DNA from: Rhodosorus marinus CCMP1338
Taxonomy: Eukaryota > Plantae > Rhodophyta
Length of the DNA stretch: 64,000 bases
Direction of reading: 5' to 3'
NCBI GenBank assembly: GCA_029953675.1
Contig: JAMWBK010000006.1
Span: 1,922,001 to 1,986,000, forward strand
In this document: positions 334 through 26,300 of the stretch, piece by piece
Layout of the letters: the number at the start of each line of letters is the position of its first letter
How positions within the stretch are numbered: the stretch's first letter is position 1
The notes under the pieces: generated by a model
What the model was told of the DNA's origin: nothing
Databases searched by the model: none
What the model saw: only the letters and a program-made list of their open reading frames with translations
Position numbers and translations under genes: made by a program

Positions 334-1814
334 ATGCAGGCGAGCACTCCTCCCGAGCAAGGGCCTGACGAAGAGAAGACTGTTACCAAAACAGATCAGC
401 CGAAGCATGTCTGCGAGCTCCTTATCCTTGTTGACCTCACCATCGGAAGTGATCCGAAGAGAGAACACGAGTTTCAGCAGATCGTTCAATGGGATTGGGC
501 CGCATACAACATCCTCGAGAGGAAAATTGTAGAGAAGAGGAGTATGACATTGGAACGGGAATGGGAAGCGGACACAGAGGATGATGATAGAGTGCACTTC
601 CAGCAAGCAGTAAACCAGTTCGATCAAGCTCTATACGAGATGTTCGTTCAGAAAGATAAGAGCTTCTGCATGTTGACGGATAATTCTTGGACACTCCAGC
701 ACGTCTTCGTGATGGAAGCGATGAGGAAGAACATTCAACTTGCGTCGCACTATCACGTGTTTTTTGACCTTAAGTCGGAATTCAAGAAGTACGAGCCGAA
801 CACTTACTGGCCTCGGGACAGACGTGCAATGCTGGACCATTTCAATTCTCCGGACATCGACGATCCCCGGGATGAGATCGCCCAGATTATTACTCTCCTG
901 CTGGAGCACAATCACTGCTTTGTGTACCCGGAAACTGTTCAAGGGGTTGATTGGGCACGAGAAACGGTAAGCCAGTTCTACATGCTCAGTTGATTTCAAG
1001 GCCGCTTGCTGACTTCTTGTGAACCTGACTTCCTTAGCTTGGTATGCCTGCTCATGCTGCGCCAATTGCGGCAGCGATCCCGGTAGGCGGAATTGTCCGA
1101 CTTCGAGGGCTTCCTTGGGCGGCAAACGAGGAGGATGTTGCGAACTTTTTCAAGGACGTTGAGCTGGTTCCGAATGCTGTTCATATGACTCACACGAGGC
1201 AGAACAAGCCAACGGGGCTTGCCTTCGTGCAAACTGCAACACTGGAAGACGCTGAAGTTGCTGTATCGTTCCACAGGAAGATGATGGATAAGAGATATAT
1301 TGAAGTCTTCAAGTCCTCCCCGCAGGACATGGCTGCCGCGATGGAACGGGCCGATGTACGGAACACAGCTCCAAAAGCTGGAGGAGGATCATACAAGTCG
1401 GTGCCAGTGAACAAAGCTCGAAATGCAGCGGCAGTTGTCGCCGCCGCGGCTGCTGCGGCGGCGGCGGCCGCTGCTGCTGTAGCAACTGCAGCTGTTGCGG
1501 TACCTGTCCCTCTCACATACCAAGTGTCCCACATAGTAAAAATGCGCGGCCTGCCGTTCTCAGCCTCGGTTGCGCAGGTAATCAAATTTTTCGAGGGCAT
1601 TGAGATATCCAACCGAGGGGTTCATCTAGTGTATGGTGCCGACGGAAGGATGGTTGGAGAGGCGTTCGTGGAGTTCCCGAGTGACCAGATGCTTGCGAAA
1701 GCTCTCCAGCGAAATAGGGAGAAGATTGGATCCAGATACATTGAGCTCTTTCGCAGCTCGCCCGCAGAAATGGTTTCTACTTTTGAGCGCTTTGGGTCAA
1801 TGCCTAGTCGCTAG
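334..1814 (+). CDS. ESRP/Fusilli-like RNA-binding protein: N-terminal DnaQ-like (degenerate DEDDh) domain + two hnRNP F/H-type qRRMs; 2 exons (334-966, 1038-1814)
   Basis: An intron at 967-1037 (GTAAG...CTGAC...TTAG) joins ORFs 334..993 and 1044..1814 in frame. FQQAVNQFDQ...SFCMLTD...HVFFDLKSEFKK resembles the ESRP exonuclease-like domain. The qRRMs read IVRLRGLPW...RYIEVFKS and IVKMRGLPF...RYIELFRS. Confidence 0.85.
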
Positions 1815-3639
1815 CTCGCTTGGAGTTTCTCGTGTGGATGTGAGTTTCTGACAGCTTCGCTGTAACACGTCGGTCCGAAACGAAACCTTTCAACATGTAT
1901 TCTAAGGTGAGAACTAGTTTGAGATTCTGTTGGCACTTTGCATCCAAATTGTGTACTGGTGAAAATGCTTGCAGTGCAATTTTTTCCGGAAGGAGTGGAT
2001 GCGACATTGAATCCGCCTGCTCTCTACAGGCGTATCTTTGCGTTGTATCACTTTTCGCAAAAAGCCGGGGCATCGGACATTTCCAGAGATGGTTACAGCC
2101 CTAGCATGCCAGTAATTTGCTGCAACTGACGCGCTGATCTCTATCCTATAGGGGAACTTGCTCTCACACATGGAGGATTCACCTTTAGGAACCTATTAGG
2201 CGCGGCACTGCTATGGGTGATGAGAGGTGCTGGACAACGTTGGAATGATACTCGAAGAATGGGGTATACGCTTAGCTAGGGGAAAGTTATATTCCAGCAA
2301 CATGGCAAGTTCACGATCAGAAGGGAGCCAATGTGTTTATGATTTCAAGAGATCTCATGAAGCTCCTAGCAGAAGTATTTGGGAACTGAATTCATCCCAT
2401 GCGAGATGGCCATGGTGTATGGGGAAGCCGCCGGCCCTACTAACATTTTTTTCTATTGTAAAATACGCAATGAAAGCATCTGCAGCATCTACAATCTGAG
2501 AGCCTCATGAGAAGAGCTGCCACAGCAGCTCTAGAAGGCCTTGTTAGAGTAGGACACTTGTGGTAGCAAGAAGTGCTTTGCCTCGATGGATGTGGACGCT
2601 CTCGACTACCACACGAGTCCTTTATTCTCATATGAATTTAGGCTCCTGGGATTGGGAGCCTAGCCCAAGCATCGGACCATGACAGAGACGCGCTTTGTGA
2701 TGAGGACTAGCAAATACCACCGCAGAACAAATTCTCATGGCTTCTGGTGAACATGAAGCATGTTTATTCCAAAAACTGAGTCAGCTTTCCCAGCATGTAC
2801 CCCTCTAAACTGCCTAGACACTGTACCGATGATTCCTCCAAGCGGACTCTCTTCCAAGCGCGGGTTGGTGACCCCGATCATCGTACTCCCGCGGCTGCAT
2901 AGTTCATTCAGCGATGATTCCTCCTAGAGACTCTCCACACAGGGCTTCAGGGAAAAATCATTCAGTTTAAGACTGCTTGCATCACGACCAGGTTTTTAGT
3001 GCTTTTCGGGTTCCACCAACCCCTTCCAAGCGATTCGGGTTCGAATCCCCCTGTCCCATTGGGGGACCAAGGCGATCAACCTCCATGGACGAGAATTAAG
3101 TAAACGCGTGCCATACAACTATTGGTCTACACAGATGCATTGATTGAGAAAAAACCCGCACAGGAAATTGATTGGTCTACAGCCCTTATGAGATATTTTA
3201 AGGGCAAATTCAAAGCTTTTCTAACACCCCGGCTGGTGACTGTTAAAAAGCATGTTTGGATTTTGTTTTGGATCCAAAAAGTTTGTAAATATTCAGCAAT
3301 ATAATGAGAAGTAGGGAAAACTCAGCACCTAATTTTTGGCTTAAGGGTCCGCTGAGTGTAGAGAGTGGATGGGAACTGTTGGATGGAATCATTTAGGATT
3401 TCGACTGCTATTGTTTTGGAATGGATTGACGGTAGAGCTGGTGGAGCCGGCGCTCAAGAGGTTTTCGTACTGTGTAGGATTGATCTCACAGAAGCTTTCT
3501 AACGTAGATGAGGTTCTGCTAGGCGAAAATCAATTTTGGAAGCGCTGGTTTGCCCTGATTCTGTTCGACTTTCTCGCACCGGGGCGTGGTGGGTAATGTT
3601 GTTGTTTCTTCGTTTATCCCGGTCTGCAAAGGAATAACG

Positions 3640-5521
3640 ATGGCAAGTAGGAGGGCATGTATGATGCTCAGGGGCTCAGTGAGGGGCTCGGTGACAGGTG
3701 TACGAGGACTGGGGCCTGGAATCAGCTCGCGTTCGCGAAAGGCAAATGAAAGGCAGCTCTCCACCCTGGGTCAAAGACCCTTTTGTTCGGGATATCGGGA
3801 GAATCAGTGCAGGACAGTGAGAAAGCTATGCGTATCCTCGGCAGAGTTGCAGGATGCTAGCGCTGGAACCCCGTTCATCCTGGCCGATATTGGGGAAGGT
3901 AGGTCCTGCTGAGCTTCCTCAGACAAGATTACAGCAGGGGAAGACCTCAACCTTAGGCTGGCTGTGATAGGGATCACGGAGGTCGAGATTATTCGGTGGT
4001 TCGTGTCGGAAGGAGATCACGTTACCCAGTTTCAAAAATTGGTAGAGGTTCAGAGCGACAAAGCCAATGTGGACATTACAAGTCGATATGACGGGAAAAT
4101 ACTGAAGCTAGGCTACGCAGAAGGCGACATAGCTATCGTTGGGACACCCTTGGTATGTGAACGATCACGTGGAGCGCACTACTTATCCCGCTTCTATGTG
4201 CTCTGAACTTCGCTTGTCTTAGTGTTTTTTGGAGACGGCAGATGCGCCGGCATCAGCGCCGCCGGAAACGGAGCTCGTACCGCACTCCGGTGACGATGTA
4301 GAAATCGTTGAGGAGCCGAAGAAACGAAGAGTTCTGGCTTCCCCTCCCGTCCGTCTCCTGGCCAAGGAGCACAATATTGACCTGTCAACACTTAGCGGAC
4401 GGTATTCGCATGCGTCAAGGAACGTTGCATCGTCTACAACATTCGAGATCTAAAAATCTGAGGAACCACATCCTCTACTTTTTGTTTCGAACAGAGGTCC
4501 TGAAGGCCGAATAGAGAAGGAAGATGTGCTCGAGGTTCTCGAGGAAAGATCAGAAAGTACCCCTGGCACTGAAGACTTTCAAAAATACCCCTCTCCAGGC
4601 AAATACAAAGCATCACTTCAGCAGAGGGAGCTGGACGAAGCTCATGAGACAACCGTTCCTATTCGAGGTAGGGAATAGTTGGTACCATGGTCATCCCAAT
4701 AAGGGCATGGCATAGAGCATGATGCTCAACACGTTCTGCGCTTCCATTGCATCAGGATTACAACGCGCTATGGTAAAGACCATGACAGCCGCGGTTGCCG
4801 TTCCCCACCTCAACCTCGGGGAGGAGATTTGCTTTGACCAACTCGTTGGTATCAAAAAGTAAGATCACTAAAAGCATCGAATCTGTATGTCATGAGTGAA
4901 CACGATTTCTCAATTTCGCTTTCGTTGGTCTGTTCTAATCAAAGCTCGGTCTCGAAGTGGGCGATGGACAAGCACAGCTTAAAGATCACGTTTCTGCCGT
5001 TCCTAATCAAGGCAACCTCTTTGGCGCTGTCCTCCTTCCCAGTACTGAACTCGCGCGTGGATGAGGGGTGCAAGAACGTCATATATCAGAATCAACACAA
5101 CATTTCCATAGCCATGGATACCCCCAAGGGCCTAGTAGTCCCCAACATCAAGCTAGTTCAAGAGCTGTCTGTACTAGACATTGCGCGGGAATTGAACAGG
5201 TTAAGTGAGACAACCAAGGCTGGTAGATTTCGCGAGGAAGATCTCGCTGGAGGTACTTTTGCTCTCTCCAACGTTGGCTCAATTGCTGGTACATACACGT
5301 CACCAGTAATTATGCTTCCGCAGGTTGCAATCGGAGCCATTGGACGGATACAAAAGCTCCCCAGATTCGATGAGGACGGTCGCGTTGTGGAGAAGAGGAT
5401 AGCACACGTGACTTGGGCCGCTGATCACCGAATCATAGACGGAGCAACAATCGCCAACTTTTCTAACCTCTGGAAACGACACGTCGAGAATCCTGCCGAA
5501 ATGATTCTCGAAATGAAGTAA
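3640..5521 (+). CDS. DBT: Branched-chain alpha-keto acid dehydrogenase E2 (dihydrolipoyl transacylase), mitochondrial, multi-exon
   Basis: Arg/Ser-rich presequence; PFILADIGEG|ITEVEIIRWFV; lipoyl motif VQSDKANVDITSRYDG; E3-binding LASPPVRLLAKEHNIDL; catalytic AADHRIIDGA; canonical introns (e.g. 3899-3970). Confidence 0.93.
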
Positions 5522-6991: not shown

Positions 6992-9368
6992 ATGCAGCCA
7001 TGGAGCAAACAACATGCTCCACGTGTTCTGGTACTTTTGTCTTTGTTTAGTCTCGGACTTGCTTCCGAATACGATCACAAGGTAACTTTCGACGATTCAC
7101 GGATTTCGTTGAAGCGAAGCTGACGAAAGTCACCTCACTTGCGGATATTGACGGTGTTGACTATTCTAGTATGAGGAAGGTGATAGAATAGGCGTGTGGG
7201 CTGCTCGCGTGGGACCTTTGAGTAAACCGTTTGAGGCTTACAACATGTATGATCTCCCCTACTGTCGACCGGACGCGATCATGATGAATTTAGAAAAGAA
7301 GGAGGCGTTCTTGGGTGAGGAAATCACTTCCTTCAACAAGATACTCAGCTACCAAAAGTTTCATTGCTCTAAAACACCGGAGATTACGGTTGCCGATTCC
7401 GCAGGCGACGCTCTTCAGGGATGCAACATGGAACATACAGGGGTCACGTTGCGCTTTAACGGTAAGTAGGAAAAGCATACATCAGCAAGCGATCCTTGCC
7501 ATTTCGACAAGGGAAGAACTGTATCTCAGCCATTTATTGCCGGCTATTCAGTCCCCGTATCTGGACAGAAGCTGTGCACGTCTTATCCCTCAGCAAGGGA
7601 AAAAGAACGCTTTATGGAAGCGGCTTACGATCGATGGGTATTTACCTTGTACGTTGATGACATGCCCGTCCGAGGCACCGTCGGACCACCCGTGGAGCAG
7701 AACGCGGTTGAGGTGAAGGACTTCAGCAAAGTCAGAATATATACTCAGTTCAGCTTTACTATAGAATACAACAAGAACCGAGTGGTAGGATTGTCGTTGG
7801 AGATGAAGTCCCCAACGGCGGTTGATGGACCTGCCTTGGACGTGACATATGATGTCAAATGGGAAAAGTCTGAGAAGGATTTTGTCTCCCGGTACGAGAA
7901 AGTTATGGAGTCTGAGCTCTTCGCCAGTAGAGCTCACTGGATAGCAATCATCAACTCGATGGCGATCGTTATTGTTATGGTAGCTATTGCAGCGAGGATC
8001 GTTCGAAACTTGCTTAATGCAGATATCCAGAAGTATTCCACCGTGCTCATGGATGATGGTCTTGATGTGGAGTTGGCGGATATAGTAGCCGCTGAGTCTG
8101 GGTGGAAACAAATCAGGGAGGATGTTCTTCGTACGCCCCCATGTCCGTTGATGCTTTGTTCCTTGATAGGCTTCGGAAACCACCTCGTCCTGCTTGTCTT
8201 GTCGTTCGTAGTCGCCACCCTCGCGGGAAATCTGTATGTTACACCGGGCCACCTTGCGAAGGCTTTCTGCCTGTCTTCCACAGTAAGCTGCATTCAACAC
8301 CATTGGGTTGCTCTTTCGATAGTTGTTCTGACGTGCTTGTATGAATTCCTCTCAGTGCACCTCCTTTTTCGCGGGATATTATGCGACTGGAGCATTATGT
8401 CGCATGACGGGCAACCTCTCTACTCGAAGCCATATTATCTCATCGGTTTTGTCTATTGGAGGGATGCTAATTCTAGGAGCTGTTTTTTTCTTACCAACAA
8501 ATCTTCTCTCCTCTATAGCGGGATCAAATCTTACTGTAAGTGAATCCAACCAATTTTATCCACAGCTTCCGCAATTGACCAAGCGCTACTTAACGCGATG
8601 CAGATATCTTACTCAACCATTTTCAAGCTTGGGCGAGTCTGGACTTTCTACTGTCTGCCTCCCGGCGTGCTCGGCTCGAGGGTAGCGAAGAGCCTCCATG
8701 AAAACGCGAAGCCACATCCCTGTAGGGAAGTTCCAAGACCGATTAGGGTTCGATTTTTGACCTCTCCGGTAGGTTGCAGCTTCTTCTCGTGTAAAGCAGG
8801 AACGAATCTAATATTGAGCTTACCTGAAACAGGTGTTCATCGCATCTGTGAGCGCGGTTATGCCCTTCTCCTGCATTGTGATGGAGGTCTTCTTCATTCT
8901 CAAGTCCTTCTGGGGCCTGAAAATGTATTACATATTCGACACACTGTTGATCATATTCTTGCTGCTGATGGCTGTGACTGCAAGTTCCAGCATTGTCGGG
9001 TCATACGTTCTCCTTAGCGCTGAGGATTACCGATGGCAATGGAGCAGTACGTGTTTAGATAACGAAAATCACGTAGAACTGCTAACACCTGATGTTGAGC
9101 ACTGAGAAGTGCCCACTCTGAATTTTCTCTTGGTCTTTTTCCCCCCGCAGGTTGGGGTAGTGGAGCATTTACAGGTTTCTACTGCTTTCTCTACTCTATG
9201 TTTTTCTATGTGTATAATACCAACATATCAGGCGTTGTTCCAACAGTATTCTATTTTACTTTCAGCCTCTTCTTCTCATCCCTCCTAGCGGTTCTCTGCG
9301 GTGCTTTGGCCTATCTAGCTTCGAGTATATTTGTGAAGAAGCTCTACACGAACTTCAAATCAGATTAA
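6992..9368 (+). CDS. TM9SF/nonaspanin (EMP70) family nine-TM protein, multi-exon
   Basis: Signal peptide then SEYDHK|YEEGD...RVGP...YDLPYC; HWIAIINS; SGWKQIREDVLR; EDYRWQW; C-terminal YTNFKSD* (KxD/E Golgi motif). Confidence 0.93.
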
Positions 9369-10258: not shown

Positions 10259-12929
10259 ATGGACAGCAACAAGAAGTATAGGAAGGGAGATAGAAATAAG
10301 AAAGGCTCAGGAAAGTTCAACCAAAACGATGCTCGGAAAACGCGCCGTGATAGGGAGGCTACGAGCATTTCGAGGGTGAACGCGGCGGTTGAAGCCATTC
10401 CGCTGTACAGTGGACTTTCGCGAGTTGAAAGGGTAAAACAAGAAAAGTTTTCTGACCTGCCGGTCTCGGAGAAAACTTTGGACGCACTAGCCGCGGCTGA
10501 CTATGAAACCCTCACGGCGATACAGACTTTGGCAATCCCGCAAGGTCTTCGAGGCTCCGACGCTTTAATTGCTGCACCAACTGGAAGCGGAAAGACTCTT
10601 TGCTTTGTAATTCCTGTCATTGAACTTCTTTGGAGATCAAGGTACGTCCTCAGCAGCTTCCAGAAGATCGTTTGTAAGCTCGCAATCCCTTACCTGCACA
10701 ACCATTGCTCCGTTCGCTGGCTACTATAAAACAGATGGAGCAGCTTAGATGGAATTGGAGCTATTATTCTTACCCCAACTCGAGAACTAGCTGTGCAAAT
10801 ATTCGAAGTCGTAACTCAGCTCCTAAAGATGCATCACATCACTGCTGGCCTAGTGATAGGCGGAAAAAGCCTGGCCACTGAACAGAGGCATATAGACAGA
10901 GCGAACATTCTTGTGGCGACGCCTGGTCGTCTGCTCCAGCACATGGATGAGAGCGTAGGCTTCTCAGCAGATAATCTGAAGCTGTTGGTCCTGGATGAAG
11001 CCGACCGAATACTAGATCTCGGCTTTGAAAGGACAATGGAAGCAATCTTGGATAATCTGTCGAGCGACAGACAAACGATGCTATTCTCTGCAACTCAAAC
11101 AAAGTCCGTGAAGGCTTTAGCAAAACTTTCACTCGAGGATCCCCAGTATATTGGCATCAAGCAGGTATGCGTCTTGCTCGAGCTTGTGACCATCAGCCTC
11201 AATGCGAGGCCAGGAGCTTTTGAAGATGGCGATGCTAAGATCCCCCTGGTTGTCTGTGCGTGAACAGGTTGAAGGCAACGAGGGTAGTGCCGCTGAAGAG
11301 AATTCCGAGGAGACGCTATCTGCAACCCCAAAGAAATTATCGCAGTTCTACACTATAATCGGAGAAGGGGATAAGTTGAACGTTCTGTGGTCATTTATTA
11401 CATCACATCTGAAGTCCAAAATCCTCGTTTTCGTGACGAGCTCAAAGCAGGTACGTATCGACTGTATACGCTGCCCAGTTGTTGAGCAGCGCCTAACCCT
11501 TTGTATGACTGTAGGTTCGATTCTTCTATGAAGCATTGCGAAGGATGAGACCTGGAATTCCTCTCTTGCATCTGTTCGGTAGGATGAAATTGCAGAAGCG
11601 AACATCCACGTATGGTGACTTTTGCAAAAGCAAAGCGGCTTGTTTGTTCGCCACCGACGTAGCCTCGAGGGGTCTGGACTTTCCAGCTGTGGACTGGGTG
11701 GTTCAGGTTGATTGTCCAGAGTCTCTTGCAACTTATATACATCGCGTTGGTAGAACTGCTCGGTATACCTCTTCTGGGAAAGCTACTCTGTTTCTTCTCC
11801 CGAGTGAGAACAAGTTTGTGGACCAGTTAAACGATTCGAGACTGCCGGCAAAGAAGATGGTGGTGAAGAGAAACAAGATGCTTGATATCACTCCGAAGCT
11901 TGAGTCGATCGTGGCTGCAAATACGGACGTCAAACATCTCGCGCAGAGGGCAGTAGTTAGCTACCTGAAGGCGGTACATCTTTTTGCAGACAAAGAGGTC
12001 TTCAACCTCCGCGAGATAGACTTCAGGAAGCTGGCACATTCCTATGGCCTTCCGAGCGCACCGAGAGTGAAGTTCCCAGCCGTAGGCGGAACAAAAGCGA
12101 TCAAAGTCGCAAAGGTGAAGGCACAGAACGAGTTTGGGTATGTGCCAAGAAAGAACGCAAACGATATTCGAGGCAAGATCGAGGTAGGTCGATTGCCTCA
12201 CTAGGAATGTGCAAAACAACTTGTGCTTTGTCCCTGTGCTGAAGTCCTAGACGTCCTCACTCTTCTCTGTGGCCCAGCTGGAGCAAGACGATGATGAGGA
12301 CCTATTACAGGTGAAGAGGACAAATCGGGACTTGGTGAACGACACTCATGAACCGGAATATCCTCCCACTATTGAGCCCCCAGTGAAGACAAAGCAAAAG
12401 CTCAAGATTCTGTCTTCGGGAGAGACTCGAAAGACTGAAGCACAGCATGTACAGTTTGGGGAATCCGAGGAACAATCCGATCCAGAGGGATCGGAGATGC
12501 CGACTGTAGTTGCAGAGGTGAGACGTAGGACTGATACTTATCTGGCGAACGCAATCTCTGAAACGGCTTTTCCTCTTTTACGCTTTGTAGAGCTCTGGTG
12601 ACGAGACTTCTGAAGGCGAGCGGGAGCAGAACTTCTTAAAGAGGGTGAGAGAAAAACTCGAAGAGGAGGACCAGAATGATGTCGCGGTACAGAAGGAGAG
12701 GATTCGTGGCAAGCACAAGAAGCAGAGGATCAGCTCTCGAAGAGAAGGTGATATGCTCAGTTCTGCGCTTGCGATGAACGAAACTGCGGACGGGAATCCG
12801 AACGAGGTTGAGAGACCGAGCTCGGAGTACAGCAGCCAAGCAGAAGAGTCTGCTGACCAAGCGGAACAGGAGTATGGACATCATGAAGATGCAGCCCTGA
12901 AGTTGTTGCGATCGACCGCCAGATTCTGA
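10259..12929 (+). CDS. DBP4: DEAD-box RNA helicase Dbp4/DDX10 (18S rRNA biogenesis), multi-exon
   Basis: KFSDLPVS; [11 protein letters not shown]; PTRELA; [11 protein letters not shown]; SAT; HRVGRTARY; C-terminal [15 protein letters not shown]...[11 protein letters not shown] typical of DDX10. Confidence 0.93.
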
Positions 12930-14409: not shown

Positions 14410-15170
14410 CTTCGCGAGTGTCGCTAGTGAAAAAAGAGCACGCAGAGTCTAGGAAACCTTGATTATACTTCAGATGACACTGAGCCAGGTCGACAGAAAG
14501 CAAGAAGCAGCTAACGCCAGACACCACCCTACCAAACAACCCCTCCCCCTCCCCTTCCCTATCCACAGCATGTACTAACAGATATATAAAGGGGGTAAAA
14601 CCCCAATCTCTCCATAAAACAAATTTTACGAATATTTAAAACTTTTGACAAGCATTTCAGATATATGGGTTGAGCAGATTACCCCCCTGCACACGTTGAT
14701 TTGTCAATTCTACAAACAGGTACAGCTGTCCCGAATGAATAAGAAAATGGAGGAACATTTGTTTGAATATTGTGGCCAATAAAAAAGTAGTATTATTTAG
14801 ATGAAGAAACTTGGGATTTTTGATCGCATCAGCAGATGGATTCAAATGTTGTTTTTTGGAAAGGTTTGATCGAGGAGGGGCTATTGAGGAGGGGAAATGG
14901 ACTAAGAGGAGGATTCGAGCTCTGGATGTTTACGTTGAGAGGAGAGGGAGAGAGGAGAGAGAGAGAGAGAGAGAGGAGTAGGGAGGATCTGAGATCGGAA
15001 ATTGTAGCATTGGGGTGTTTATTATTCTGGGAGATGTTGGATTGAGAGTTTTGAGAAGAAGCCGTGCTTGTCTGTGAGGTTTTGTTTGGCGGGGAGGTGG
15101 GGGGTGGGGGGGGCGAGGGGGGGTGAGTTGTTTTTGGTTAATATTTGAGGGAGGCGGTGTGTTTGGTAAT

Positions 15171-16721
15171 ATGTCTGGACCTCCACCGCCGCCACCGCCG
15201 CCGCCGCCACCGCCACGGGGTGGAGGAGTGGGAGGGGCTCCGCCTCCTCTACAGCCACCACCTCCGGGAGCACTTGGGTCTGCGGGGGGATCTGCTGCGC
15301 CTCCGCCTCCACCTCCGCCGATGGCTTCTGGCGCTGGTATGAGATCGGCTCCAACTGCGCCGGCACCAGCGGCACCGCCACAACCGTCTTCTGGAATCTC
15401 TGCGCCTCCACCGCCGCCACCACCACCACCAGCGTCGAGGTCTGCTGCAGGAGCAGGATCTGCTGCGCCACCTCCGCCGCCACCTATACCGTCATTACCC
15501 TCGAGGCCATCTGCGCCGGTGGTTTCTGCCGCACCACCTCCGATACCACCACCACCATCGTCGAGGCCATCTGCTCAGGTGGTTTCTGCCGCACCACCTC
15601 CGCCGCCACCTCCACCATCGTCGAGGTCTGCTTCTGGACGAGAACCTGTTGCTGCTCCGCCGCCACCTCCGATGCCCAGTTCTGCAACGCAAGCTGCGCC
15701 AGGGATAAGAGCGATGGATGCACCCAGCGCTCCCCCGGTACCCGCAGCACCACTGTCGCGAGTTAAGTCGGACGCGCCCCCTCCTCCTCCTCCCCCGCCT
15801 CCTGCAGGAGTCTCCACTCCAGTTTCGATGGCTTCCGCAGCTGCAGAGGCGCCGCCGCCACCTCCTCCATGTGAAGCTCCTATGCCGCCGCCACCGCCTT
15901 TAGAGGAGGATTCGGGGATTTCGAAGGACACCACGCTGGAGCCCCCTACGCCGCTGCGTCCAGTCCAAGCCGCGCAACGTGCACCAGCCCAGCCATCGGC
16001 GGCTGCTCCGGTAAGCAAACTTTCAAAGCTTTCTTCGTGCACAACTGGACGCCACTAATTAACGCGCTTTATCTCCTTCGTATCTCTCGGTATGGCAAGC
16101 AGGCAGCTAACTACCTGCCACAAGGACTTGAAACGTAAGCACGCATTCACCAAGATGGTAGTTCACTGTCAAGAATCCGCTCCATCCCCTTGCTGACATG
16201 AGCGCTTGACCCTTTGCGTTCCGTATTTCCCAGACCCCAAGTATTCAGACCAGAGATGATGACTAGACCAAGCGGATCTACAACAGTAAAAGCGGAATTC
16301 GTCTGGGGCGATGGAGCAATGGATTCAGTTTCCGTTTGTGGCGCTTGGGACAACTGGAAGCCTGTGCCTTTGGCGAGCGAGGGTGGTGCGGTCCCTGCTT
16401 GTTTTCCTACTCGTTTCGCTGATCTCATCAACATTCACCCGCTAACGCATGAAAAACTTGTCTTTCGGAAGTCCAGATAACATGTGGTCTGTAGTCACCG
16501 TCGTACCCGCTGGGACATATGAATATCGTTTCCTTGTTGACGGAGAATGGAGATTCAGCTCGCGGCACCCGACAGTAGGAGAAGCCCCTGACCTTAACAA
16601 TATAAGAGTATTCCAAGCAGCCCCTCCCTCAATTCAGCAGCGGAAGGCGGTGGAAGAAGCACATGCAACGGCGCATGCACCGGAGACGAAGGAGGGATGT
16701 GCATGCTGTGTGATATCGTAG
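15171..16721 (+). CDS. Polyproline-rich protein with C-terminal CBM48 (AMPK-beta-type glycogen/starch-binding) domain and CaaX box; 4 exons (15171-16010, 16103-16134, 16234-16385, 16477-16721)
   Basis: About 280 aa of Pro-run repeats; AEFVWGDG..SVSVCGAWDNWK.VPL..|..WSVVTVVPAGTYEYRFLVDGEW; ends GCACCVIS*. Splice phases are consistent. Confidence 0.85.
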
Positions 16722-16912
16722 GGGTAGGATCCGTTGGTTGTCACCGCGAACGGCGTATATATTGAAATTAGTTGAGTTTTTGTGTTCCTTTTTACTTAAG
16801 AGAGAACAGCGTCTTCGTAATTTGTGAGAAGAAATCGGGGTTGCCATCGTTAGGATTTCCTCTCTGCTTTTTTGGGCCCTGCAGCCACTTCTTCCGTTGC
16901 TGCGATCGAGAA

Positions 16913-17829
16913 CTACTTGTCATCTTCATATACTGGGATTTGATTATGTCGCCACTGGTGCACCATACTTCTGCCGAAGGCCTGAAACTTTCGGACGTTT
17001 TCCTTCTCAGGCAATCTATCTTCAATTGTGTAGTGGAAACCTAAGAATTTTGAAGGACCGTGATATTGATGCTCTCCCTTCAGTTCAAAGAGGTCCTAGA
17101 AATCTATACGTTGTCATATGCTCCCTTGAAGATCTTACCGTTCCGAACAGCGTACTCTACAGCGGCTTCCTGCGTCGGAAAGGAGACGTTCAAATTTGTC
17201 AAAGGATCGCCAGTGCTCGTCCATCCCTGCCAAGGTACAACACGAGCGACGGAATCAGTTCCTTCGGTTCATTCATGAACCAACGAGTTTCCCTAGAGAT
17301 TTTTCCGATAAATAGTCGAGCAACTTTACCATCAACGGGTTAGTCCACCGGTCCACGTCGCCATCAGTTTTCTCGAATCTGAGATGCCATGTAGCATTTT
17401 TCGATTTCTTTCCCTGTTGCATTGCGGACCTGCACAATCGTTTTCATAGGACGTCAGGTCAGCAGAAAGGAAAACATCGAAGGAGAAAAGGCTCCACTAG
17501 CTCCCAAAAACTAGCGCTACTGGATGAGAGCGAGATAAAGCAAAAAAAAAACAAAACAGCACTGCATACCTGGCAGGCCTGTATATTCTGACATGCCGCG
17601 ATACGTGCTCATCCGGTGCTCCAGACAGCATGAATACCTTATTATGCGGATTCTCCTCTGCAGCCTCCGCAACTTCTCCCCTTCCTTCCTTCACCGCCGC
17701 GACCTCGCCCTGAACCTTAGAAGAAGACTTTAACGCACAAGACGAACCGTGAAACTCCCGCAGCACACTCCCACGGCCTCCCAAAGCGAGAGCCTTCCCT
17801 CTAAAAACCAAATTCCTCCACACAGACAT
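16913..17829 (-). CDS. NDUFS4: NADH:ubiquinone oxidoreductase 18-kDa subunit, 4 exons
   Basis: Mitochondrial presequence; RHVRIYRPAR|SAMQQG...WHLRFE...RWTNPLM|GWTSTGDPL..LNVSFPTQEAAVEYAVRN|GFHYTIE. Confidence 0.93.
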
Positions 17830-18947
17830 CGCTCTCAAAAAAAACAAGTTCAACCCCAAAATTTGCTCCAACAAGAGAATTGACGCTCTCTAAACCCCAC
17901 CGAAAAACCGCCTATGCTGAGTTCGTCTATGAATAGTAGTTCAGGAGCACTATACCCACTTCCTCAATGAAGCTAAGACTCCACCGGCCACCCCTCTCCA
18001 TTCCCAAGCTCCCATCCTCCGGGAGGGGCGATGTATACACCCCACTGTCCTCCTCAGACGAACCTTAACGTATAAAACTGGTTCTTTAGTACTCCCCTAT
18101 AAAACAACCACTAATTTTCTCATTAATCTTTGTATCAGAATATGCCCCCCTTTTCCAAATTCTATTTATTGTTTATTAGAATTTTTATTTTGATACTTGG
18201 TTTTGTAGGGGTGATTTGCTTTTTCTTGGTTTTAGCCTTTGATGGATTGGATAGGGGTGCAGGAAAATTTTGAATTGGATGAGATCGATGTGGGCAACGG
18301 ACGTGTTGGGGTTGTGAATGTCTTGCAAGATGCAGTAAGAATGGTGGAGTTGTAGATTCTCAAACATATTCGTACATGTTAGGAGGTGACGTTGGTTCTG
18401 ACCTGGGGTAGGGGTCTGTGATTTTGAAGAAGTTCCATGGATTGTCGTGACCCTTCCCCTCCCCTTCCCCCCCTCCCCCCTCTCTCCTGAAAGTTGCTGG
18501 TCTTTTACTAGAGATTTTGACCTTTTTCGTTGGACTATTGGGCGATTCACAAGTTTCCAGGTCATCCTGTATCATTGACGTAATCGGTAGTGAAACCTCA
18601 GAAAATTTCAGGGCAAGCCTCTTGGACTATGGATAGCTCCTCGCGCACGTAAAGGAGCAAGAAGGATCTGTATCCATCCCAGCTTCTCTTACAGATTTTC
18701 CCACCGGACTAACTGGTTCGCGTTTTCTGCTTTTTAGTTTCCCTTCGTGCAGGAATTTGACATTGGCCATCCGACGAGATAATTCTGCTCAAGATTGGTG
18801 CGCTGCGTTCTGTGGAAAGGCCAAATTGTTTCTGTCTCATTGTCCTATGCACTCTCGCACTCTTCAGAAATAAACTTTCACCCCCCAGGAAAAAGACTAT
18901 CCCAAGGAAACACGTATTAGAAATAATATCACCTAATCCTTGCTCCA

Positions 18948-20734: not shown

Positions 20735-21799
20735 ATGGCCGATAGCGATGTCGAACTGAAGAAGATTGGCTCGCGAACTTTCCGAATCCACCGAACATGG
20801 GCAGATAGGGAGGCCATCTCGCGAAGGTCCGTTGGCGGACGGACCGAAGGATCGCTGGATATTTTTGAGACGGTCGTGGAGCTAGATACTGAAATTTTGT
20901 CTGAAGACTTGTTAAAGAAGCTGGAGGAATCGACCGCGACGAGGATTGAGGCCAGACGGGGGAGTGTCACAATCTCTGGATCTTCTGGTGAAGCCGTTGA
21001 GGGGGCTAGGGAGGAGATTCGTCGACTGGCCGATGAGAAAAGGACTGGTAGAAAGGCGTCTCCATACACACACTTTGTAGTGATCCCAATGACAACGGGT
21101 TCCATACAGGTAAAGGGCGCAGAGATCCAGCAGCAGATCTTGGATGACTCTCTCGACAGTGTGAATGAGAGATGCCTGGAAAATCCCGAACGTTTTCGAT
21201 GCGTTTTATGCATGCTAAGGCTTCAGTCTCAGTCGGACTTGATGACAGCCAAGCTTGCCCTCCGCAAGGTATCCAGAGAGATGAAGGAAGTAGTCCGCGG
21301 TCGTGGTCTTCGATTGAAAGTGGGTGGTTTGGAGGTTCTCCCTGAAGGAAAGCCGAGGCAAGCCACGTCCCTGTACTGTGTTCTGAAAGAGGTCCAAACA
21401 CAGACCCAGGAGACTTTGCTGAATATCAGTAAGATCCTATACATGAGTCTTCAGGATGCTGGGATTCTAACCGAAGAGGACATGAGGAGGCAGAAGATCT
21501 TGGTGGATTCCGAGATCAGACCCTTGTGAGTATCTTTGAGACGTCTCACCCAACTTAGACACCTTCAAAGATCTAAAGTTGAGATTTCACATGTACTTAG
21601 GTTTTGCATGACTCTGCTAACTGCTCGTTCGGCTGGTGTTCAGAATCTTAACCTAAGCCTGGTTGTGGACAGAATGAGGTTCAGGGAGGTAGGAGAAGTT
21701 CTCGTGGAAGAAATACGGTTGGCTCGACTTGACCAAATAGACGAATCCGGGTTCTTTCGGTCAGAGTTAAGCATGCCGCTTGTAAGCATGCCCCGCTAA
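20735..21799 (+). CDS. ASCC1: ASCC1-like protein (degenerate KH + AKAP7/2H phosphoesterase fold), 2 exons (20735-21525, 21601-21799)
   Basis: N-terminal ELKKIGSRTFR; KKLEESTATRI...VTISG...AREEI; PYTHFVVIP; NPERFRCVLCML; LKVGGLEVL; second exon ...VGEVLVEEIRLARLDQIDESGFF resembles the ASCC1 C-terminus. Confidence 0.8.
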
Positions 21800-23340: not shown

Positions 23341-26300
23341 ATGGTGAGCCGTTATCCCAATCCGTACCTCAATCAGCAACAGCATGAGAATCAAGGCGCA
23401 CCGGGATCGAACGATGTGACCCAAAATCACCAAGCCGCGAACGGCGTTTCCGGGGTCCCGCTTGCTGCAAACCAGGCCTACGGGCAGTATGCTTACACTG
23501 GCCAACACCCACAGCCGGTATATCAACAGGATGCTTCTGGCGCAATGGCATCAACAGCGCAACCTCCATCAGCGTCAGGGCATGATGTTCCTCAGCAAGG
23601 ATATATGCCACCACCAGCAGGACAAGTGGACCAGCAACCGAACGCATATGGTCAAGGAGGTGCAGCGATAAATGGGGCGTACACGCAGCAGCCAGGAGGA
23701 CAGCAATATGCGCAGTATGCACAGCAGGATATGAACAGCATGCAGAGCCTAACAGCTCAAGTGCAGAACATGAACATGACAACTGCCGGTCAGCCGGTAA
23801 CTGCGGAAAGTATGCAGCCAGGCATGCAACCTGGATTGATGCCTGGCGTGCAGCCCAGCATGCAACCTGGCATGCAACCTGGCATGCAACCTGGCATGCA
23901 ACCTGGCATGCAACCTGGCATGCAACCTGGCATGCAACCTGGCATGCAACCCGGCATGCAACCCGGCATGCAACCCGCGATGCAAGGTTACATTGAGGAA
24001 CCAACGGCCCCAACGATGGAAAATGCTCCCCGTCCAAGGCTTGAATCAGCGGACGTACTTGCGCGAATAAACGACATGGACATAAAACAGCCGTCAGTTG
24101 CTAGCGTCGCGTCGTCTGGAATGCTCCAAGTCGATGCTATGGGAAGACCTATTCAAGGGGGGGCGCCACAGGAACAGCGGTGGCCAGCAACGGTTGCGTG
24201 TCCCCCTGAGCTCTACTACAACACGAGCCCGCGGTGTGCTCGGCTGACAACCAATGCGTTTCCAAACGCCCGTTCATTGGCGAAGAAATACGGGCTACCG
24301 CTTGGAGCAGTACTCCAGCCCATGGAGGACGGTGCACAGCTGCCCGTAGTGAATTTTGGAAGCGGGGTTGTGAGATGCAGGAGATGCCGCTCTTACATTA
24401 ACTTCATGTGCAAGTTCACGCAGGAGGGCAGAGAGTGGAAATGTTCAATGTGTATGAGCATGAACAAACCAGCGTCGGAGTACTACGCAGCTCTGGACCA
24501 GAATGGGTACCGGGTGGATGTTTCCAGGCGCCCTGAGCTCTTCTGTGGCAGTTATGAGGTGGAGGCTCCCACACAGTATATGGTTAGACCGCCGATGCCG
24601 CCGATGTACGTGTTCGTGGTCGAAGTTACCCCAACAGCAATTAGTTCAGGGCTTCTCAACGCTGCTGTGGCAGGAATTCGTGATTCACTCGACTTGCTGC
24701 CGAACAGTGGACGTACAAGGGTTGGTATTATAACGTTTGACAGCAGTGTACATTTTTACAGTTTCAAGGGAGAAAATCATTCAGAACTTTCGACGATCGT
24801 GCTGCCGGATATCAACGAAGTGTTCTTGCCTACGCTGACGGACCGGATTGCTATTCCACTTCATGAGGGCATGGACGCGCTAAAGCAACTCTTGGACAAA
24901 TTGCCTGAGATGTATGGGGCAGAGGGGGGAGCAATGGCATCGCATGCAGCGGAAAAATCGGCTTTCGGCGCTGCGTTGATTTACGGTCAGGCTATTGTTG
25001 AGGATACCGGTGGCAAAATTATGGCCGTCTTGTGTACAAGACCTAAAATAGGGCCAGGGCTTACCCGCGACAGGAGCGACAACACTGCTCTTGGAACTGA
25101 CAGGGAGAGGCACATGCTGTCTCCTGACAGTACTTTCTACAAACAAAAAGCAGTCGACCTTGCAAGGGTACAAGCCACTGTTGACCTGATCATTTGTACA
25201 CCTACGGTTGGGTCCTTCTTGGACGTAGCGACGATCGCGCCCTTGTCCAAGTATTCTGGAGGGGATCTATTATACAACCCAAATTTTGTCATTGCAAGGG
25301 ATGGGCATCTGCTGGTGGAGTCGATGAAGAGAATGCTGGGACGGGAAACTGGTTGGGAAGCGGTCATGAGGATTCGTGCTTCACAAGGAGTACGGTGCAA
25401 GACGTTCCACGGGCGTTTCTTCCTAAAGAGCACGGATTTGTTAGCTTTGCCGTCAGTGGATCCAGATAAGACTTTTGCTGTCGAGTTCGACTACGACGAC
25501 AGCCTACTAGAGCACACGGTTTTCTGCGTACAAATCGCGCTCCTGTATACAACATCTGCGGGCGAAAGGCGAATTCGAGTGCACACGATCGCCATTCCCA
25601 TTGTGTCGAGCGTGAGCGAACTGTTTTCCAATGCTGACGCTTCAGCAACAGCAAGCATCGTCGCGAGAGCTGCTGCGGAGAACCTTAAGGACAAGCGCTT
25701 AGAGGACGTAAGGCCTGCCTCTGCCATCGACCCTTTTCTTGACTAGGTTTCTAACCTTCAGTTGCGTGCTTTCCTCACTCACGCAGGTAAGAAAATCAGT
25801 TTCCGACACTGCCGTCAACACGCTCGCAGTATATAAGCAGTCAGACATGAAGCACCAGTCCGTACTTGGCTTTCTTCCGGAGTCGCTTTCGCTGTACCCT
25901 CTGTACATCCAAGGGCTTCTCAAGACGCCGTTGTTCTCACGAGATGCGTTTGGCCTCTTTGGCTTTCGAATGGACGACAAGAGTGCGCTGATGCATTATA
26001 TGAACGTCGCCACTTCGGCAACGACGACGGTGATGGGTTACCCTACGATACTGCCCTTGTACCCTCTTCAAGACTACCCTGAGGCTGGAGTAAGTACCAC
26101 CCATACACCTCACTAGTGCACCTCTGTGCAATGGAAACGGCTTGTTTGACGTTGACTGGATTATGGCGTTTAGGTTTACACAGAAGGAGAAAACGGAGTA
26201 GTAGCATTGACATTACCCCCCGCGATGCCGGCTATGAAGGCTTGCTTGCGAAGTAACTCGGCGGTTATGATAGACGACGGTATCACTACTATCATCTGGG

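What the first reader, a model, noticed from the sequence alone, without database searches (positions are those of the whole stretch)
15171..16721. Polyproline + CBM48 + CaaX protein: candidate membrane/actin tether for cytosolic (floridean) starch
Seen: about 280 aa of formin-FH1/WASP-like Pro runs (one of 12 prolines, plus repeated SRPSAxVVSAAPPP units), then a CBM48 with its Trp residues (WGDG, GAWDNW, DGEW), ending ...GCACCVIS*. Established: CVIS is a canonical farnesyl CaaX box and adjacent Cys residues are typical S-acylation sites. CBM48 binds alpha-glucans in AMPK-beta, PTST and SEX4, and polyproline binds profilin/SH3/WW domains. Red algae store starch in the cytosol. Seen: there is no AMPK-beta ASC domain, no N-myristoyl Gly2 and no PTST-type coiled coil. 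Inference: a lipid-anchored scaffold that positions starch granules or their initiation at a membrane and links them to the actin machinery. I do not recognise this architecture from any described family.
Basis: partly seen in the sequence, partly recalled or inferred. Interest (0 to 1): 0.78.

Follow-up and report, generated by a model that had tools for sequence, protein, structure and literature searches.

The report
Lipid-anchored starch-binding protein of red algae
This is a real, expressed gene for a protein with a long proline-rich arm, a starch/glycogen-binding module and a Ras-like lipid-anchor signal; the family occurs throughout the red algae and no paper I could find describes it, so it is a good candidate for holding cytosolic starch at a membrane.

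Summary
Window 15171-16721 (+) holds a four-exon gene for a 422-aa protein. Residues 1-280 are 39% proline with eleven runs of at least four prolines. Residues about 308-387 are a CBM48 (Pfam E=8e-15, confident AF2 model). The protein ends ...GCACCVIS, followed by a stop codon. Transcript contigs from a sister species read colinearly through that stop, so nothing splices past CVIS. A profile search found at least 27 sequence clusters with CBM48 plus a C-terminal CaaX, mostly CC-a-a-S, the yeast Ras2 farnesyl+palmitoyl signal. Several also have an N-terminal polyproline run. Every named member is a red alga: Galdieria, Porphyra/Pyropia, Gracilariopsis, Rhodosorus, Bangiopsis. They are annotated as hypothetical proteins or, wrongly, as SnRK1 beta-2. 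The CBM48 and tail are under strong purifying selection (dN/dS about 0.05). Three of the AMPK-beta glucan-binding residues I checked are kept (both Trp and the Asn), Lys126 is Arg, and Leu146 is not kept. There is no ASC domain, coiled coil, FH2 or WH2. My best reading is a dually lipidated membrane adaptor that binds alpha-glucan close to the bilayer and offers a polyproline arm to partners. The actin link is untested speculation. I rate it a new variant of a known kind, of moderate to high interest.

The parts
15171..16010 (+). Exon 1: start codon and 280-aa proline-rich region (MSGPPPPPPPPPPPP...), FH1-like polyproline tracts
   Evidence: Colinear with transcript L003, and all indels relative to L003 are multiples of 3. 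The donor is GTAAGC.
15501..15626 (+). 60-bp tandem repeat encoding the SRPSA(P/Q)VVSAAPPP(I/P)PPPPS units
   Evidence: 2.1 copies, 90% matches
16011..16102 (+). Intron 1 (92 nt, GTAAGC...CAG)
   Evidence: Absent from transcript L003; boundaries
16103..16134 (+). Exon 2: 32-nt mini-exon (AANYLPQGLE + 2 nt)
   Evidence: Matches L003 ...SANPLPEGLEQ.... It restores the frame between exon 1 and exon 3.
16135..16233 (+). Intron 2 (99 nt, GTAAGC...CAG)
   Evidence: Absent from L003
16234..16385 (+). Exon 3: linker motif PQVFRPEMM and the N-terminal half of the CBM48 (from about 16283), including W332, the equivalent of rat AMPK-beta1 W100
   Evidence: RPxxxxPEMM is conserved in P0002.
16386..16476 (+). 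Intron 3 (91 nt, weak donor GTGCGG, CTAAC branch-like site, CAG acceptor); retained in the sister-species contigs
   Evidence: It contains an in-frame stop and a 5-nt indel relative to L003. P0002 (a transcript) is continuous across this point.
16477..16613 (+). Exon 4, first part: C-terminal half of the CBM48 (MWSVVTVVPAGTYEYRFLVDGEW...LNNIRVF), with R359, W366 and N382 as equivalents of K126, W133 and N150
16614..16694 (+). Tail: short predicted helix (QQRKAVEEAHATAH) and a flexible linker, about 32 residues between the CBM48 and the lipidated Cys
   Evidence: helix 114-127 of the 142-aa model, low pLDDT; dN/dS 0.045
16695..16721 (+). G-C-A-C-C-V-I-S-stop: CaaX box CVIS (16707-16718), two or three upstream Cys as S-acylation candidates, TAG at 16719-16721
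   Evidence: Conserved as CC-a-a-X in orthologues. CCIIS of yeast Ras2 is a transferable farnesyl+palmitoyl plasma-membrane signal (PMC2173492).

Best explanation
The gene encodes a peripheral membrane adaptor found, as far as named members show, only in red algae.

Inferred mechanism:
- The C-terminal CVIS is farnesylated and then processed.
- The adjacent Cys residues (C-A-C-C) are S-acylated, as in yeast Ras2 (CCIIS) and in H/N-Ras. This fixes the C-terminus to the cytosolic face of a membrane, either the plasma membrane or the ER/Golgi.
- The CBM48 lies only about 32 residues from the anchor. It binds alpha-1,4/1,6-glucan (floridean starch, or glycogen in Galdieria) at that membrane surface.
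- The 280-aa polyproline arm projects into the cytosol and serves as a docking platform for polyproline readers (profilin, SH3, WW, GYF or EVH1 type), or simply as a long PPII spacer.
- The net function would be to tether or position cytosolic storage-glucan particles, or their initiation or turnover, at a membrane.

Shown: gene structure, expression, domain identity and conservation of all three modules.
Inferred: lipidation, glucan binding, membrane location, any partner.
For: Gene model and expression. Sister-species transcript contigs L003/L004 are spliced at introns 1 and 2. The L001 transcript is one continuous ORF running MSGPPPPPPPP...CBM48...RGCCSIS.

CBM48 identity. Pfam E=7.8e-15. 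PDB sequence search gives the AMPK beta1 CBM at 1e-8. AF2 pLDDT exceeds 90 over the module. Foldseek's top matches are AMPK beta CBM/cyclodextrin complexes and SEX4.

Glucan-contact residues. The equivalents of rat beta1 W100, W133 and N150 are kept, and K126 is Arg, across most of the family. PMC2955755 names W100 and W133 as the key Trp residues.

CaaX conservation. At least 27 representative clusters end in C-a-a-X, mostly CC[TSVI][IV]S, often preceded by a polybasic patch. Florideophytes regenerate the CaaX across an intron.

Ras2 precedent. CCIIS alone confers dual lipidation and plasma-membrane targeting in yeast (PMC2173492).

Selection. dN/dS is 0.055 for the CBM48 and 0.045 for the tail, against 0.58 for the proline-rich region.

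N-terminal polyproline. Polyproline starting at residues 3-6 recurs in Galdieria phlegrea, in the cluster that includes Bangiopsis, and in unnamed members. Polyproline coding also lies upstream of the truncated Gracilariopsis gene model.

Anchor substitution. Relatives P0054, P0096, P0114 and P0138 carry a C-terminal transmembrane tail anchor in place of the CaaX, which suggests that C-terminal membrane attachment is the selected property.
Against: There is no biochemical or localisation evidence for any member.

The equivalents of beta1 L146 and T148 in the binding loop are not conserved (alignment).

The window protein lacks the polybasic patch seen in many orthologues (ETKEGCACCVIS), so stable anchoring would depend on S-acylation.

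I did not check that this organism has farnesyltransferase, Rce1, ICMT or DHHC enzymes.

The proline-rich region is fast-evolving, and polyproline runs are absent from some models (Rhodosorus KAJ8906651.1, P0012), although those models may be truncated or paralogous.

A subgroup lacks the CaaX altogether (P0016, P0021, P0024).

No WH2, FH2 or Atg8-interaction motif was found.
Confidence: 0.55

Rival explanations
1. It is a divergent AMPK/SnRK1 beta regulatory subunit, as the Gracilariopsis orthologue is auto-annotated. It would recruit the kinase to membranes or glycogen.
For: The CBM48 is closest to AMPK-beta CBMs. PXF47287.1 is named SnRK1 regulatory subunit beta-2. AMPK beta is also lipid-anchored, by myristate (my own knowledge).
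Against: Pfam detects nothing but the CBM48 at E<=0.1 or E<=1, so there is no ASC/alpha-gamma-binding domain (AMPKBI). Only about 35 residues follow the CBM48. The N-terminus is MSG, so there is no Gly2. The database name is similarity-based only.
Confidence: 0.07
2. One reading: a starch-to-actin tether. The FH1-like arm binds profilin-actin, or feeds formins, and couples starch granules at a membrane to actin assembly.
For: Eleven polyproline runs of 4-12 residues resemble formin FH1. N-terminal polyproline is conserved from Galdieria to this window. Red algae have formins and actin-based motility without Arp2/3 or myosin II (PMC13606620; PMC10846614).
Against: Pfam finds no FH2, WH2 or other actin-binding element. 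I identified no partner. The proline-rich region evolves quickly (dN/dS 0.58) and polyproline runs are missing from some family members. Polyproline is also read by SH3, WW, GYF and EVH1 domains, or may act only as a spacer.
Confidence: 0.2
3. The CBM48 is not a storage-glucan binder here. The protein would be a membrane scaffold for another process, for example plasma-membrane wall-polysaccharide synthesis (red-algal cellulose synthase also carries a cytosolic CBM48), or a protein-protein module.
For: Red-algal CESA has an N-terminal cytosolic CBM48 at the plasma membrane (PMC2955755). A dual-lipid CC-a-a-S signal predicts the plasma membrane. In AMPK, CBM48 also makes protein contacts (my own knowledge).
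Against: The CESA CBM48 has lost both key Trp residues. This family keeps both Trp residues, the Lys/Arg and the Asn under strong purifying selection.
Confidence: 0.13
4. The CaaX-like ending is fortuitous or not used, and the protein is a soluble cytosolic CBM48 protein.
For: None specific. Some CaaX-like ends are poor substrates, and a related subgroup lacks the motif (P0016, P0021, P0024).
Against: The Cys-Cys motif sits at the aligned position in 24 of 24 tail-reaching hits, against Cys at -4 in 4 of 120 control proteins. It is conserved from Cyanidiophyceae to Florideophyceae. Tail dN/dS is 0.045. Florideophytes regenerate the CaaX across an intron. Relatives carry tail anchors instead.
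Confidence: 0.05

Closest known systems
AMPK/SNF1/SnRK1 beta subunits (N-myristoyl + CBM48 + ASC)
   Same: The CBM48 is of the same subfamily, giving the best sequence and fold matches. The Trp/Lys/Asn glucan-binding residues are kept. The logic of one lipid anchor plus one glucan-binding module on a non-catalytic protein is the same.
   Different: The anchor is at the opposite end and of a different chemistry (C-terminal farnesyl/palmitoyl rather than N-myristoyl). There is no ASC domain, so no route into the kinase heterotrimer. A 280-aa polyproline arm is added.
STBD1 / genethonin-1 (mammalian membrane-anchored glycogen tether, CBM20) - recalled from my own knowledge
   Same: A non-catalytic protein that couples a starch/glycogen-binding module to a membrane anchor. 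This is the best functional analogy for tethering a glucan particle to a membrane.
   Different: STBD1 has an N-terminal hydrophobic anchor, a CBM20 and an Atg8-family interaction motif. This protein has a C-terminal lipid anchor and a CBM48, and I recognised no AIM. The two are not homologous outside the broad CBM20/48 clan.
PTST1/2/3 (plant PROTEIN TARGETING TO STARCH; coiled coil + C-terminal CBM48) - recalled from my own knowledge
   Same: A non-catalytic CBM48 scaffold. PTST2 works with the membrane-associated MFP1 to place granule initiation.
   Different: PTSTs are plastidial, use coiled coils for partner binding and have no lipid anchor. This protein is cytosolic, carries polyproline instead of a coiled coil and has its own anchor.
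Yeast Ras2 / H-Ras type CC-a-a-X dual-lipidation signal
   Same: The family consensus CC[TSVI][IV]S matches the Ras2 pentapeptide CCIIS (P0049 ends in exactly CCIIS). CCIIS is sufficient for farnesylation, palmitoylation and plasma-membrane targeting (PMC2173492).
   Different: Only the tail is alike. There is no GTPase domain.
Formin FH1 domains
   Same: Multiple runs of 5-12 prolines separated by short Gly/Ala/Ser spacers.
   Different: No FH2 or any other formin domain. Profilin binding is untested.
Red-algal cellulose synthase N-terminal CBM48 (PMC2955755)
   Same: A second case of a cytosolic CBM48 held at a red-algal membrane.
   Different: The CESA module is fused to a transmembrane enzyme and has lost both key Trp residues. 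This family keeps them and is a stand-alone adaptor.

Membership tests
AMPK/SnRK1 beta subunit | CBM48 (AMPK1_CBM) domain | tested here: met
   PF16561 E=7.8e-15, residues 311-377. PDB AMPK beta1 CBM E=1e-8. Foldseek.
AMPK/SnRK1 beta subunit | C-terminal ASC / alpha-gamma subunit-binding domain (Pfam AMPKBI) | tested here: not met
   No Pfam hit other than the CBM48 at E<=1 or E<=0.1. Only about 35 residues follow the CBM48.
AMPK/SnRK1 beta subunit | N-terminal Gly2 for myristoylation | tested here: not met
   The protein starts MSGPPPP. Orthologues start MSG, MSA, MST, MTS or MSP.
PTST (protein targeting to starch) | Coiled-coil region N-terminal to a C-terminal CBM48 | tested here: not met
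   The N-terminal 280 aa are 39% Pro, which is incompatible with a coiled coil. The only predicted helix is 14 residues long and lies after the CBM48.
PTST (protein targeting to starch) | Plastid transit peptide / plastid location | not testable with these tools
   The N-terminus is a polyproline run and a C-terminal CaaX implies a cytosolic face. No targeting predictor was available.
CaaX prenyl proteins with adjacent S-acylation (Ras2/H-Ras type) | C-terminal Cys-aliphatic-aliphatic-X with X = S/M/Q/A/C (farnesyltransferase type) | tested here: met
   CVIS followed by a stop. Orthologues end in CSIS, CVVS, CTIS, CIIS, CSIQ, CSLQ and similar.
CaaX prenyl proteins with adjacent S-acylation (Ras2/H-Ras type) | Cys immediately upstream of the CaaX Cys as palmitoyl acceptor | tested here: met
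   GCACCVIS in the window. CC is nearly universal in the family. For the Ras2 CCIIS precedent see PMC2173492.
CaaX prenyl proteins with adjacent S-acylation (Ras2/H-Ras type) | Actual farnesylation, aaX cleavage, methylation and palmitoylation; presence of the enzymes in this organism | not tested
   This needs biochemistry. The enzyme genes are not in the window, and I had no organism-restricted search.
Formin / FH1-containing actin assembly factors | FH1-like polyproline tracts | tested here: met
   Eleven runs of at least 4 Pro, up to 12.
Formin / FH1-containing actin assembly factors | FH2 domain (or WH2) that contacts actin | tested here: not met
   No FH2 or WH2 Pfam hit.
STBD1-like glycogen-membrane tether | CBM20 plus N-terminal hydrophobic anchor plus Atg8-interaction motif | tested here: not met
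   The module is CBM48, not CBM20. The anchor signal is C-terminal and lipid-type. I recognised no AIM by eye. The similarity is functional analogy only.
Red-algal polyPro-CBM48-CCaaX family (undescribed; e.g. Gasu_26910, KAJ8906651.1, PXF47287.1, OSX69232.1) | Signature TEFVW.DGA...W(N/D).W.P...(M/L)WSVVT.VP.G..E(F/Y)(K/R)F.VDGEW..S.RHP..G...NN(I/V)R plus C-terminal CC-a-a-X | tested here: met
   Alignments. The profile search ranks these above all other CBM48 proteins.

The most novel reading that the evidence does not exclude
The family is a red-algal invention that solved a problem specific to cytosolic starch, namely where to put the granules. A Ras-type dually lipidated CBM48 receptor would nucleate or dock floridean starch or glycogen particles on a defined membrane (plasma membrane, ER or outer plastid envelope). 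Its FH1-like arm would recruit profilin-actin or other polyproline readers to position or mobilise them. That would make it a functional counterpart of plant PTST2-MFP1 and mammalian STBD1, built from different parts.
Probability: 0.2. Interest if true: 0.78.

Novelty: new variant of a known kind. Interest (0 to 1): 0.6.

Why it matters
From my own knowledge, red algae make starch in the cytosol, and little is known about how granules are initiated, positioned or handed to degradation there. The plant machinery (PTST2, MFP1, SS4, MRC) is plastidial.

This family spans at least the Cyanidiophyceae, Stylonematophyceae, Bangiophyceae and Florideophyceae. It combines a glucan-binding module with a membrane-anchor signal and a long protein-docking arm, which makes it a concrete and easily testable candidate for that missing layer.

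The finding also corrects a database annotation: the Gracilariopsis orthologue is not a SnRK1 beta-2 subunit. It adds a third independent solution, after AMPK-beta myristoylation and the STBD1 anchor, to attaching storage-glucan binders to membranes.

Tried and rejected
1. A two-intron model with a phase-0 acceptor at 16255, built before transcript evidence. I rejected it when P0002 showed that RPxxxxPEMM is coding and L003 revealed the 32-nt mini-exon.

2. Splicing past CVIS at GTAGGG. Rejected because L003/L004 are colinear through the stop to 17041. The downstream 'exons' of those contigs belong to the convergent minus-strand NDUFS4 gene, whose introns at 17042-17137 and 17228-17328 read CT..AC on the plus strand.

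3. The word-indexed homologue search found few relatives even with a 16-sequence profile. The exhaustive representative search was what revealed the family.

4. I suspected the multi-CBM48 proteins high in that list of being eukaryotic relatives. The named ones are bacterial.

5. Identifying the organism. No exact-protein record exists for the window's Sec24 ORF. Sec24 homologues give only a best named hit in Rhodophyta, Hildenbrandia at 45% identity, with unnamed hits up to 63%. The window is therefore probably from a red alga with no close public annotated genome, and its class remains undetermined.

6. Literature searches returned nothing on this family. I searched CBM48 with prenylation, with floridean starch and with red algae; starch-granule proteomics; SnRK1 beta in Rhodophyta; and the accession numbers and locus tags.

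I repeated it with A3.

8. The taxa of the tail-anchored relatives could not be resolved from their contigs.
Full report
**Observation.** The region 15171-16721 on the plus strand contains three reading-frame segments that join into one gene. I fixed the exon structure by aligning transcript-derived contigs from a sister species, L003/L004 (JGI 3300016967, about 87% nucleotide identity), to the window. The structure is:
- exon 1, 15171-16010
- intron 1, 16011-16102 (GTAAGC..CAG)
- a 32-nt mini-exon, 16103-16134
- intron 2, 16135-16233 (GTAAGC..CAG)
- exon 3, 16234-16385
- intron 3, 16386-16476 (GTGCGG..CAG, with a CTAAC branch-like site)
- exon 4, 16477-16721, ending in TAG.

Intron 3 is retained in L003/L004. 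It carries an in-frame stop and a 5-nt indel between the two species, and the more distant transcript L001 is continuous across the homologous point. The product is 422 aa.

**The three modules.**
1. Residues 1-280 are 39% Pro, 18% Ala and 12% Ser. They hold eleven runs of at least 4 prolines; the first run, of 12, starts at residue 4. A 60-bp tandem repeat encodes the SRPSAxVVSAAPPP units.
2. Residues about 308-387 are a CBM48. Pfam AMPK1_CBM matches at E=7.8e-15 and is the only significant family besides the related X25 module. The best solved relatives by sequence are the AMPK beta1/beta2 CBMs, then LSF1 and SEX4. An AlphaFold2 model of the last 142 residues gives pLDDT above 90 over the beta-sandwich, a short low-confidence helix and a disordered tail. 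Foldseek returns AMPK-beta CBM structures, including cyclodextrin complexes, and SEX4. In the HMMER alignment to rat beta1, W332, R359, W366 and N382 correspond to W100, K126, W133 and N150. W100 and W133 are named as the key Trp residues in PMC2955755; the other residue numbers come from my own knowledge of Polekhina et al. 2005. The L146 and T148 loop positions are not conserved.
3. The protein ends KEGCACCVIS followed by a stop.

**Is the stop real?** Yes. L003 and L004 run colinearly with the genome from exon 4 through the TAG for another 320 nt, to 17041. The remaining parts of these contigs match 17138-17227 and 17329-17984, but the two gaps are introns of a minus-strand gene (…AAAC|CTAAG…ATCTTAC|CG… on the plus strand, which is GTAAGA…AG on the minus strand). 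That gene is NDUFS4 (PF04800, E=1e-22). It converges on the gene under study, with roughly 190 nt between the two stop codons. The contigs are therefore chimeras of two overlapping convergent transcripts, not evidence of splicing past CVIS. The independent L001 transcript also stops directly after CSIS.

**Relatives.** The word-indexed search found three: a sister-species fragment ending GCACCVIS, P0002 ending RGCCSIS and P0003 ending KKCCCVVS. Translating their contigs shows the full architecture in each. L001 runs MSGPPPPPPPP…(five or more polyPro runs)…CBM48…CCSIS. L002 (genomic) runs MSALPPPPPPP…a long FH1-like array…CBM48…CCCVVS.

An exhaustive profile search of 1.84 billion representatives gave 2127 hits with E<=0.001. 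Among the top 150, every hit whose alignment reaches the tail (24 of 24) has the Cys-Cys motif at the aligned position. Counting hits whose alignment stops short of the tail, at least 27 clusters end in C-a-a-X. The endings include CCTIS, CCSIS, CCVIS, CCVVS, CCIIS, CCLIS, CSIQ, CSLQ, CCVIQ, CCTIT and CCTII, often preceded by Lys/Arg. In a control set of 120 Sec24 homologues, 4 have Cys at -4. Several members also begin with M-x-x-polyPro: P0007, P0020, P0028, P0058 and P0088.

Named members are all red algae:
- Galdieria sulphuraria (XP_005706424.1/Gasu_26910, GJD11952.1) and G. phlegrea
- Rhodosorus marinus (KAJ8906651.1)
- Bangiopsis sp.
- Porphyra umbilicalis (OSX69232.1), P. purpurea and Pyropia yezoensis
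- Gracilariopsis chorda (PXF47287.1).

The database names are 'hypothetical protein', 'AMPK glycogen-binding domain-containing protein' and, for G. chorda, 'SnRK1 regulatory subunit beta-2'. The named multi-CBM48 proteins that also score high are bacterial. The window itself is probably from a red alga. Its Sec24 has Hildenbrandia (Rhodophyta) as best named hit, ahead of plants, and unnamed hits reach 63% identity. I could not determine the class.

**Selection.** Between the window and L003, dN/dS is 0.055 for the CBM48, 0.045 for the 37-residue tail and 0.58 for the proline-rich region. All indels in that region are multiples of three. The glucan-binding module and the anchor signal are therefore tightly constrained. 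In the arm, composition and frame are kept but sequence is not.

**Mechanism.** The consensus CC-a-a-S is the yeast Ras2 signal. In Ras2 the CaaX Cys is farnesylated and the preceding Cys palmitoylated. Transplanting CCIIS onto another protein is enough for palmitoylation and plasma-membrane targeting, while SCIIS gives endomembranes (PMC2173492). I therefore infer farnesylation at C419 and S-acylation at C418 (and possibly C416), with the protein attached to the cytosolic leaflet.

The CBM48 ends 32 residues before C419, so its binding face would sit within about 10 nm of the bilayer. The proline-rich region could extend tens of nanometres if it adopts a PPII helix; both distances are my own estimates from residue counts. 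A plausible job is to hold cytosolic storage glucan at a membrane and to recruit proteins that read polyproline.

Two observations fit the idea that C-terminal membrane attachment is the selected property. Relatives P0054, P0096, P0114 and P0138 replace the CaaX with a hydrophobic tail anchor. Florideophytes keep a CaaX even though an intron interrupts it.

The actin link is only a possibility. Red algae do have formins and actin-based motility (PMC13606620; PMC10846614). This protein, however, has no FH2 or WH2, and no partner is known.

**Comparison with known families.** It is not an AMPK/SnRK1 beta subunit, because it has no ASC domain and no Gly2. It is not a PTST, because it has no coiled coil and no sign of plastid targeting. 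It is not a formin. It works most like mammalian STBD1 (membrane anchor plus CBM20) or the myristoyl-plus-CBM half of AMPK beta, but with different parts at different ends. Red-algal cellulose synthase also places a CBM48 at the cytosolic face of a membrane (PMC2955755), but that module has lost both Trp residues.

**Novelty and verdict.** The genes are in public databases but are unnamed or misnamed, and six literature searches found no description. I rate this a new variant of a known kind (lipid- or membrane-anchored storage-glucan binders) and a new family as such. Its interpretation is partly supported: the anchor and glucan-binding elements are strongly conserved but untested, and the actin coupling is speculative. 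Interest is 0.6.

Noticed in passing
L005 (G. chorda NBIV01000026.1) about 3600-3852; L006 about 3226-3500: Florideophyte orthologues have an intron inside the CaaX box. G. chorda reads ...TGC TGC ATC|GTAAGT TAA...CTTCAG|TCA TGA, which gives ...KKCCIS. Unspliced, G. chorda would read ...KKCCIVS*, also a CaaX. L006 reads ...TGT TGT GTG|GTAAGT...CCTTAG|TCA TGA, which gives ...KKCCVS. The terminal coding exon is only 6 nt. This explains the ORF fragments that run on past CCVV (P0056, P0061, P0063, P0068, P0080, P0089).
   Followed up: partly
L005 about 2700-3100: The G. chorda model PXF47287.1 (174 aa, named SnRK1 beta-2) looks N-terminally truncated. Polyproline coding (MPPPPPPPPPLPP...PPPPPPPPP...) lies just upstream in another frame.
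   Followed up: partly
P0054, P0096, P0114, P0138 (L007, L008): These are CBM48 proteins related to the family that end in a hydrophobic transmembrane tail anchor instead of a CaaX. Their source organisms are unknown (Logan assemblies).
   Followed up: partly
P0016, P0021, P0024; P0006, P0073: P0016, P0021 and P0024 form a CaaX-less subgroup with Ser/Arg-rich tails. P0006 and P0073 are variants with two CBM48 modules plus a CaaX (KCCALC, KCCLIS). Their taxa are unknown.
   Followed up: no
window about 16911-17990, minus strand: This is a convergent NDUFS4 (complex I 18-kDa subunit) gene with at least two introns (17042-17137, 17228-17328). Its 3' end lies about 190 nt from the stop of the CBM48 gene. 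The sister-species contigs L003/L004 fuse the two transcripts.
   Followed up: yes
window 16386-16476: Intron 3 has a weak donor (GTGCGG) and is retained in both sister-species contigs. Retention would truncate the protein inside the CBM48. It could be regulated intron retention or simply unprocessed RNA.
   Followed up: partly
window 14945-15130: A (GA)n tract and a G-rich tract (GGGGGGTGGGGGGGGCGAGGGGGGG) lie immediately upstream of the start codon, in the promoter/5'UTR region. The sister transcript begins at about 15143.
   Followed up: no
window 53219-56074, minus strand: A 951-aa ORF with a weak PT-repeat hit lies in a stretch with strongly negative AT skew (-0.2 to -0.3 at 52-56 kb). 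It is probably another low-complexity protein.
   Followed up: no
window 1044-1814, 7614-8543, 10793-12900, 20735-21529, 23341-25746, 33992-34846, 36140-38707, 46477-47178: The neighbouring genes are ordinary eukaryotic housekeeping genes. Pfam hits are RRM protein, EMP70, AKAP7-like 2'5' RNA ligase domain, Sec24, CCDC47, a Nup192-like nucleoporin and a FAD oxidoreductase. The 10793-12900 gene looks like a DEAD-box helicase from the ORF translations (not scanned against Pfam). None is related to starch.
   Followed up: partly
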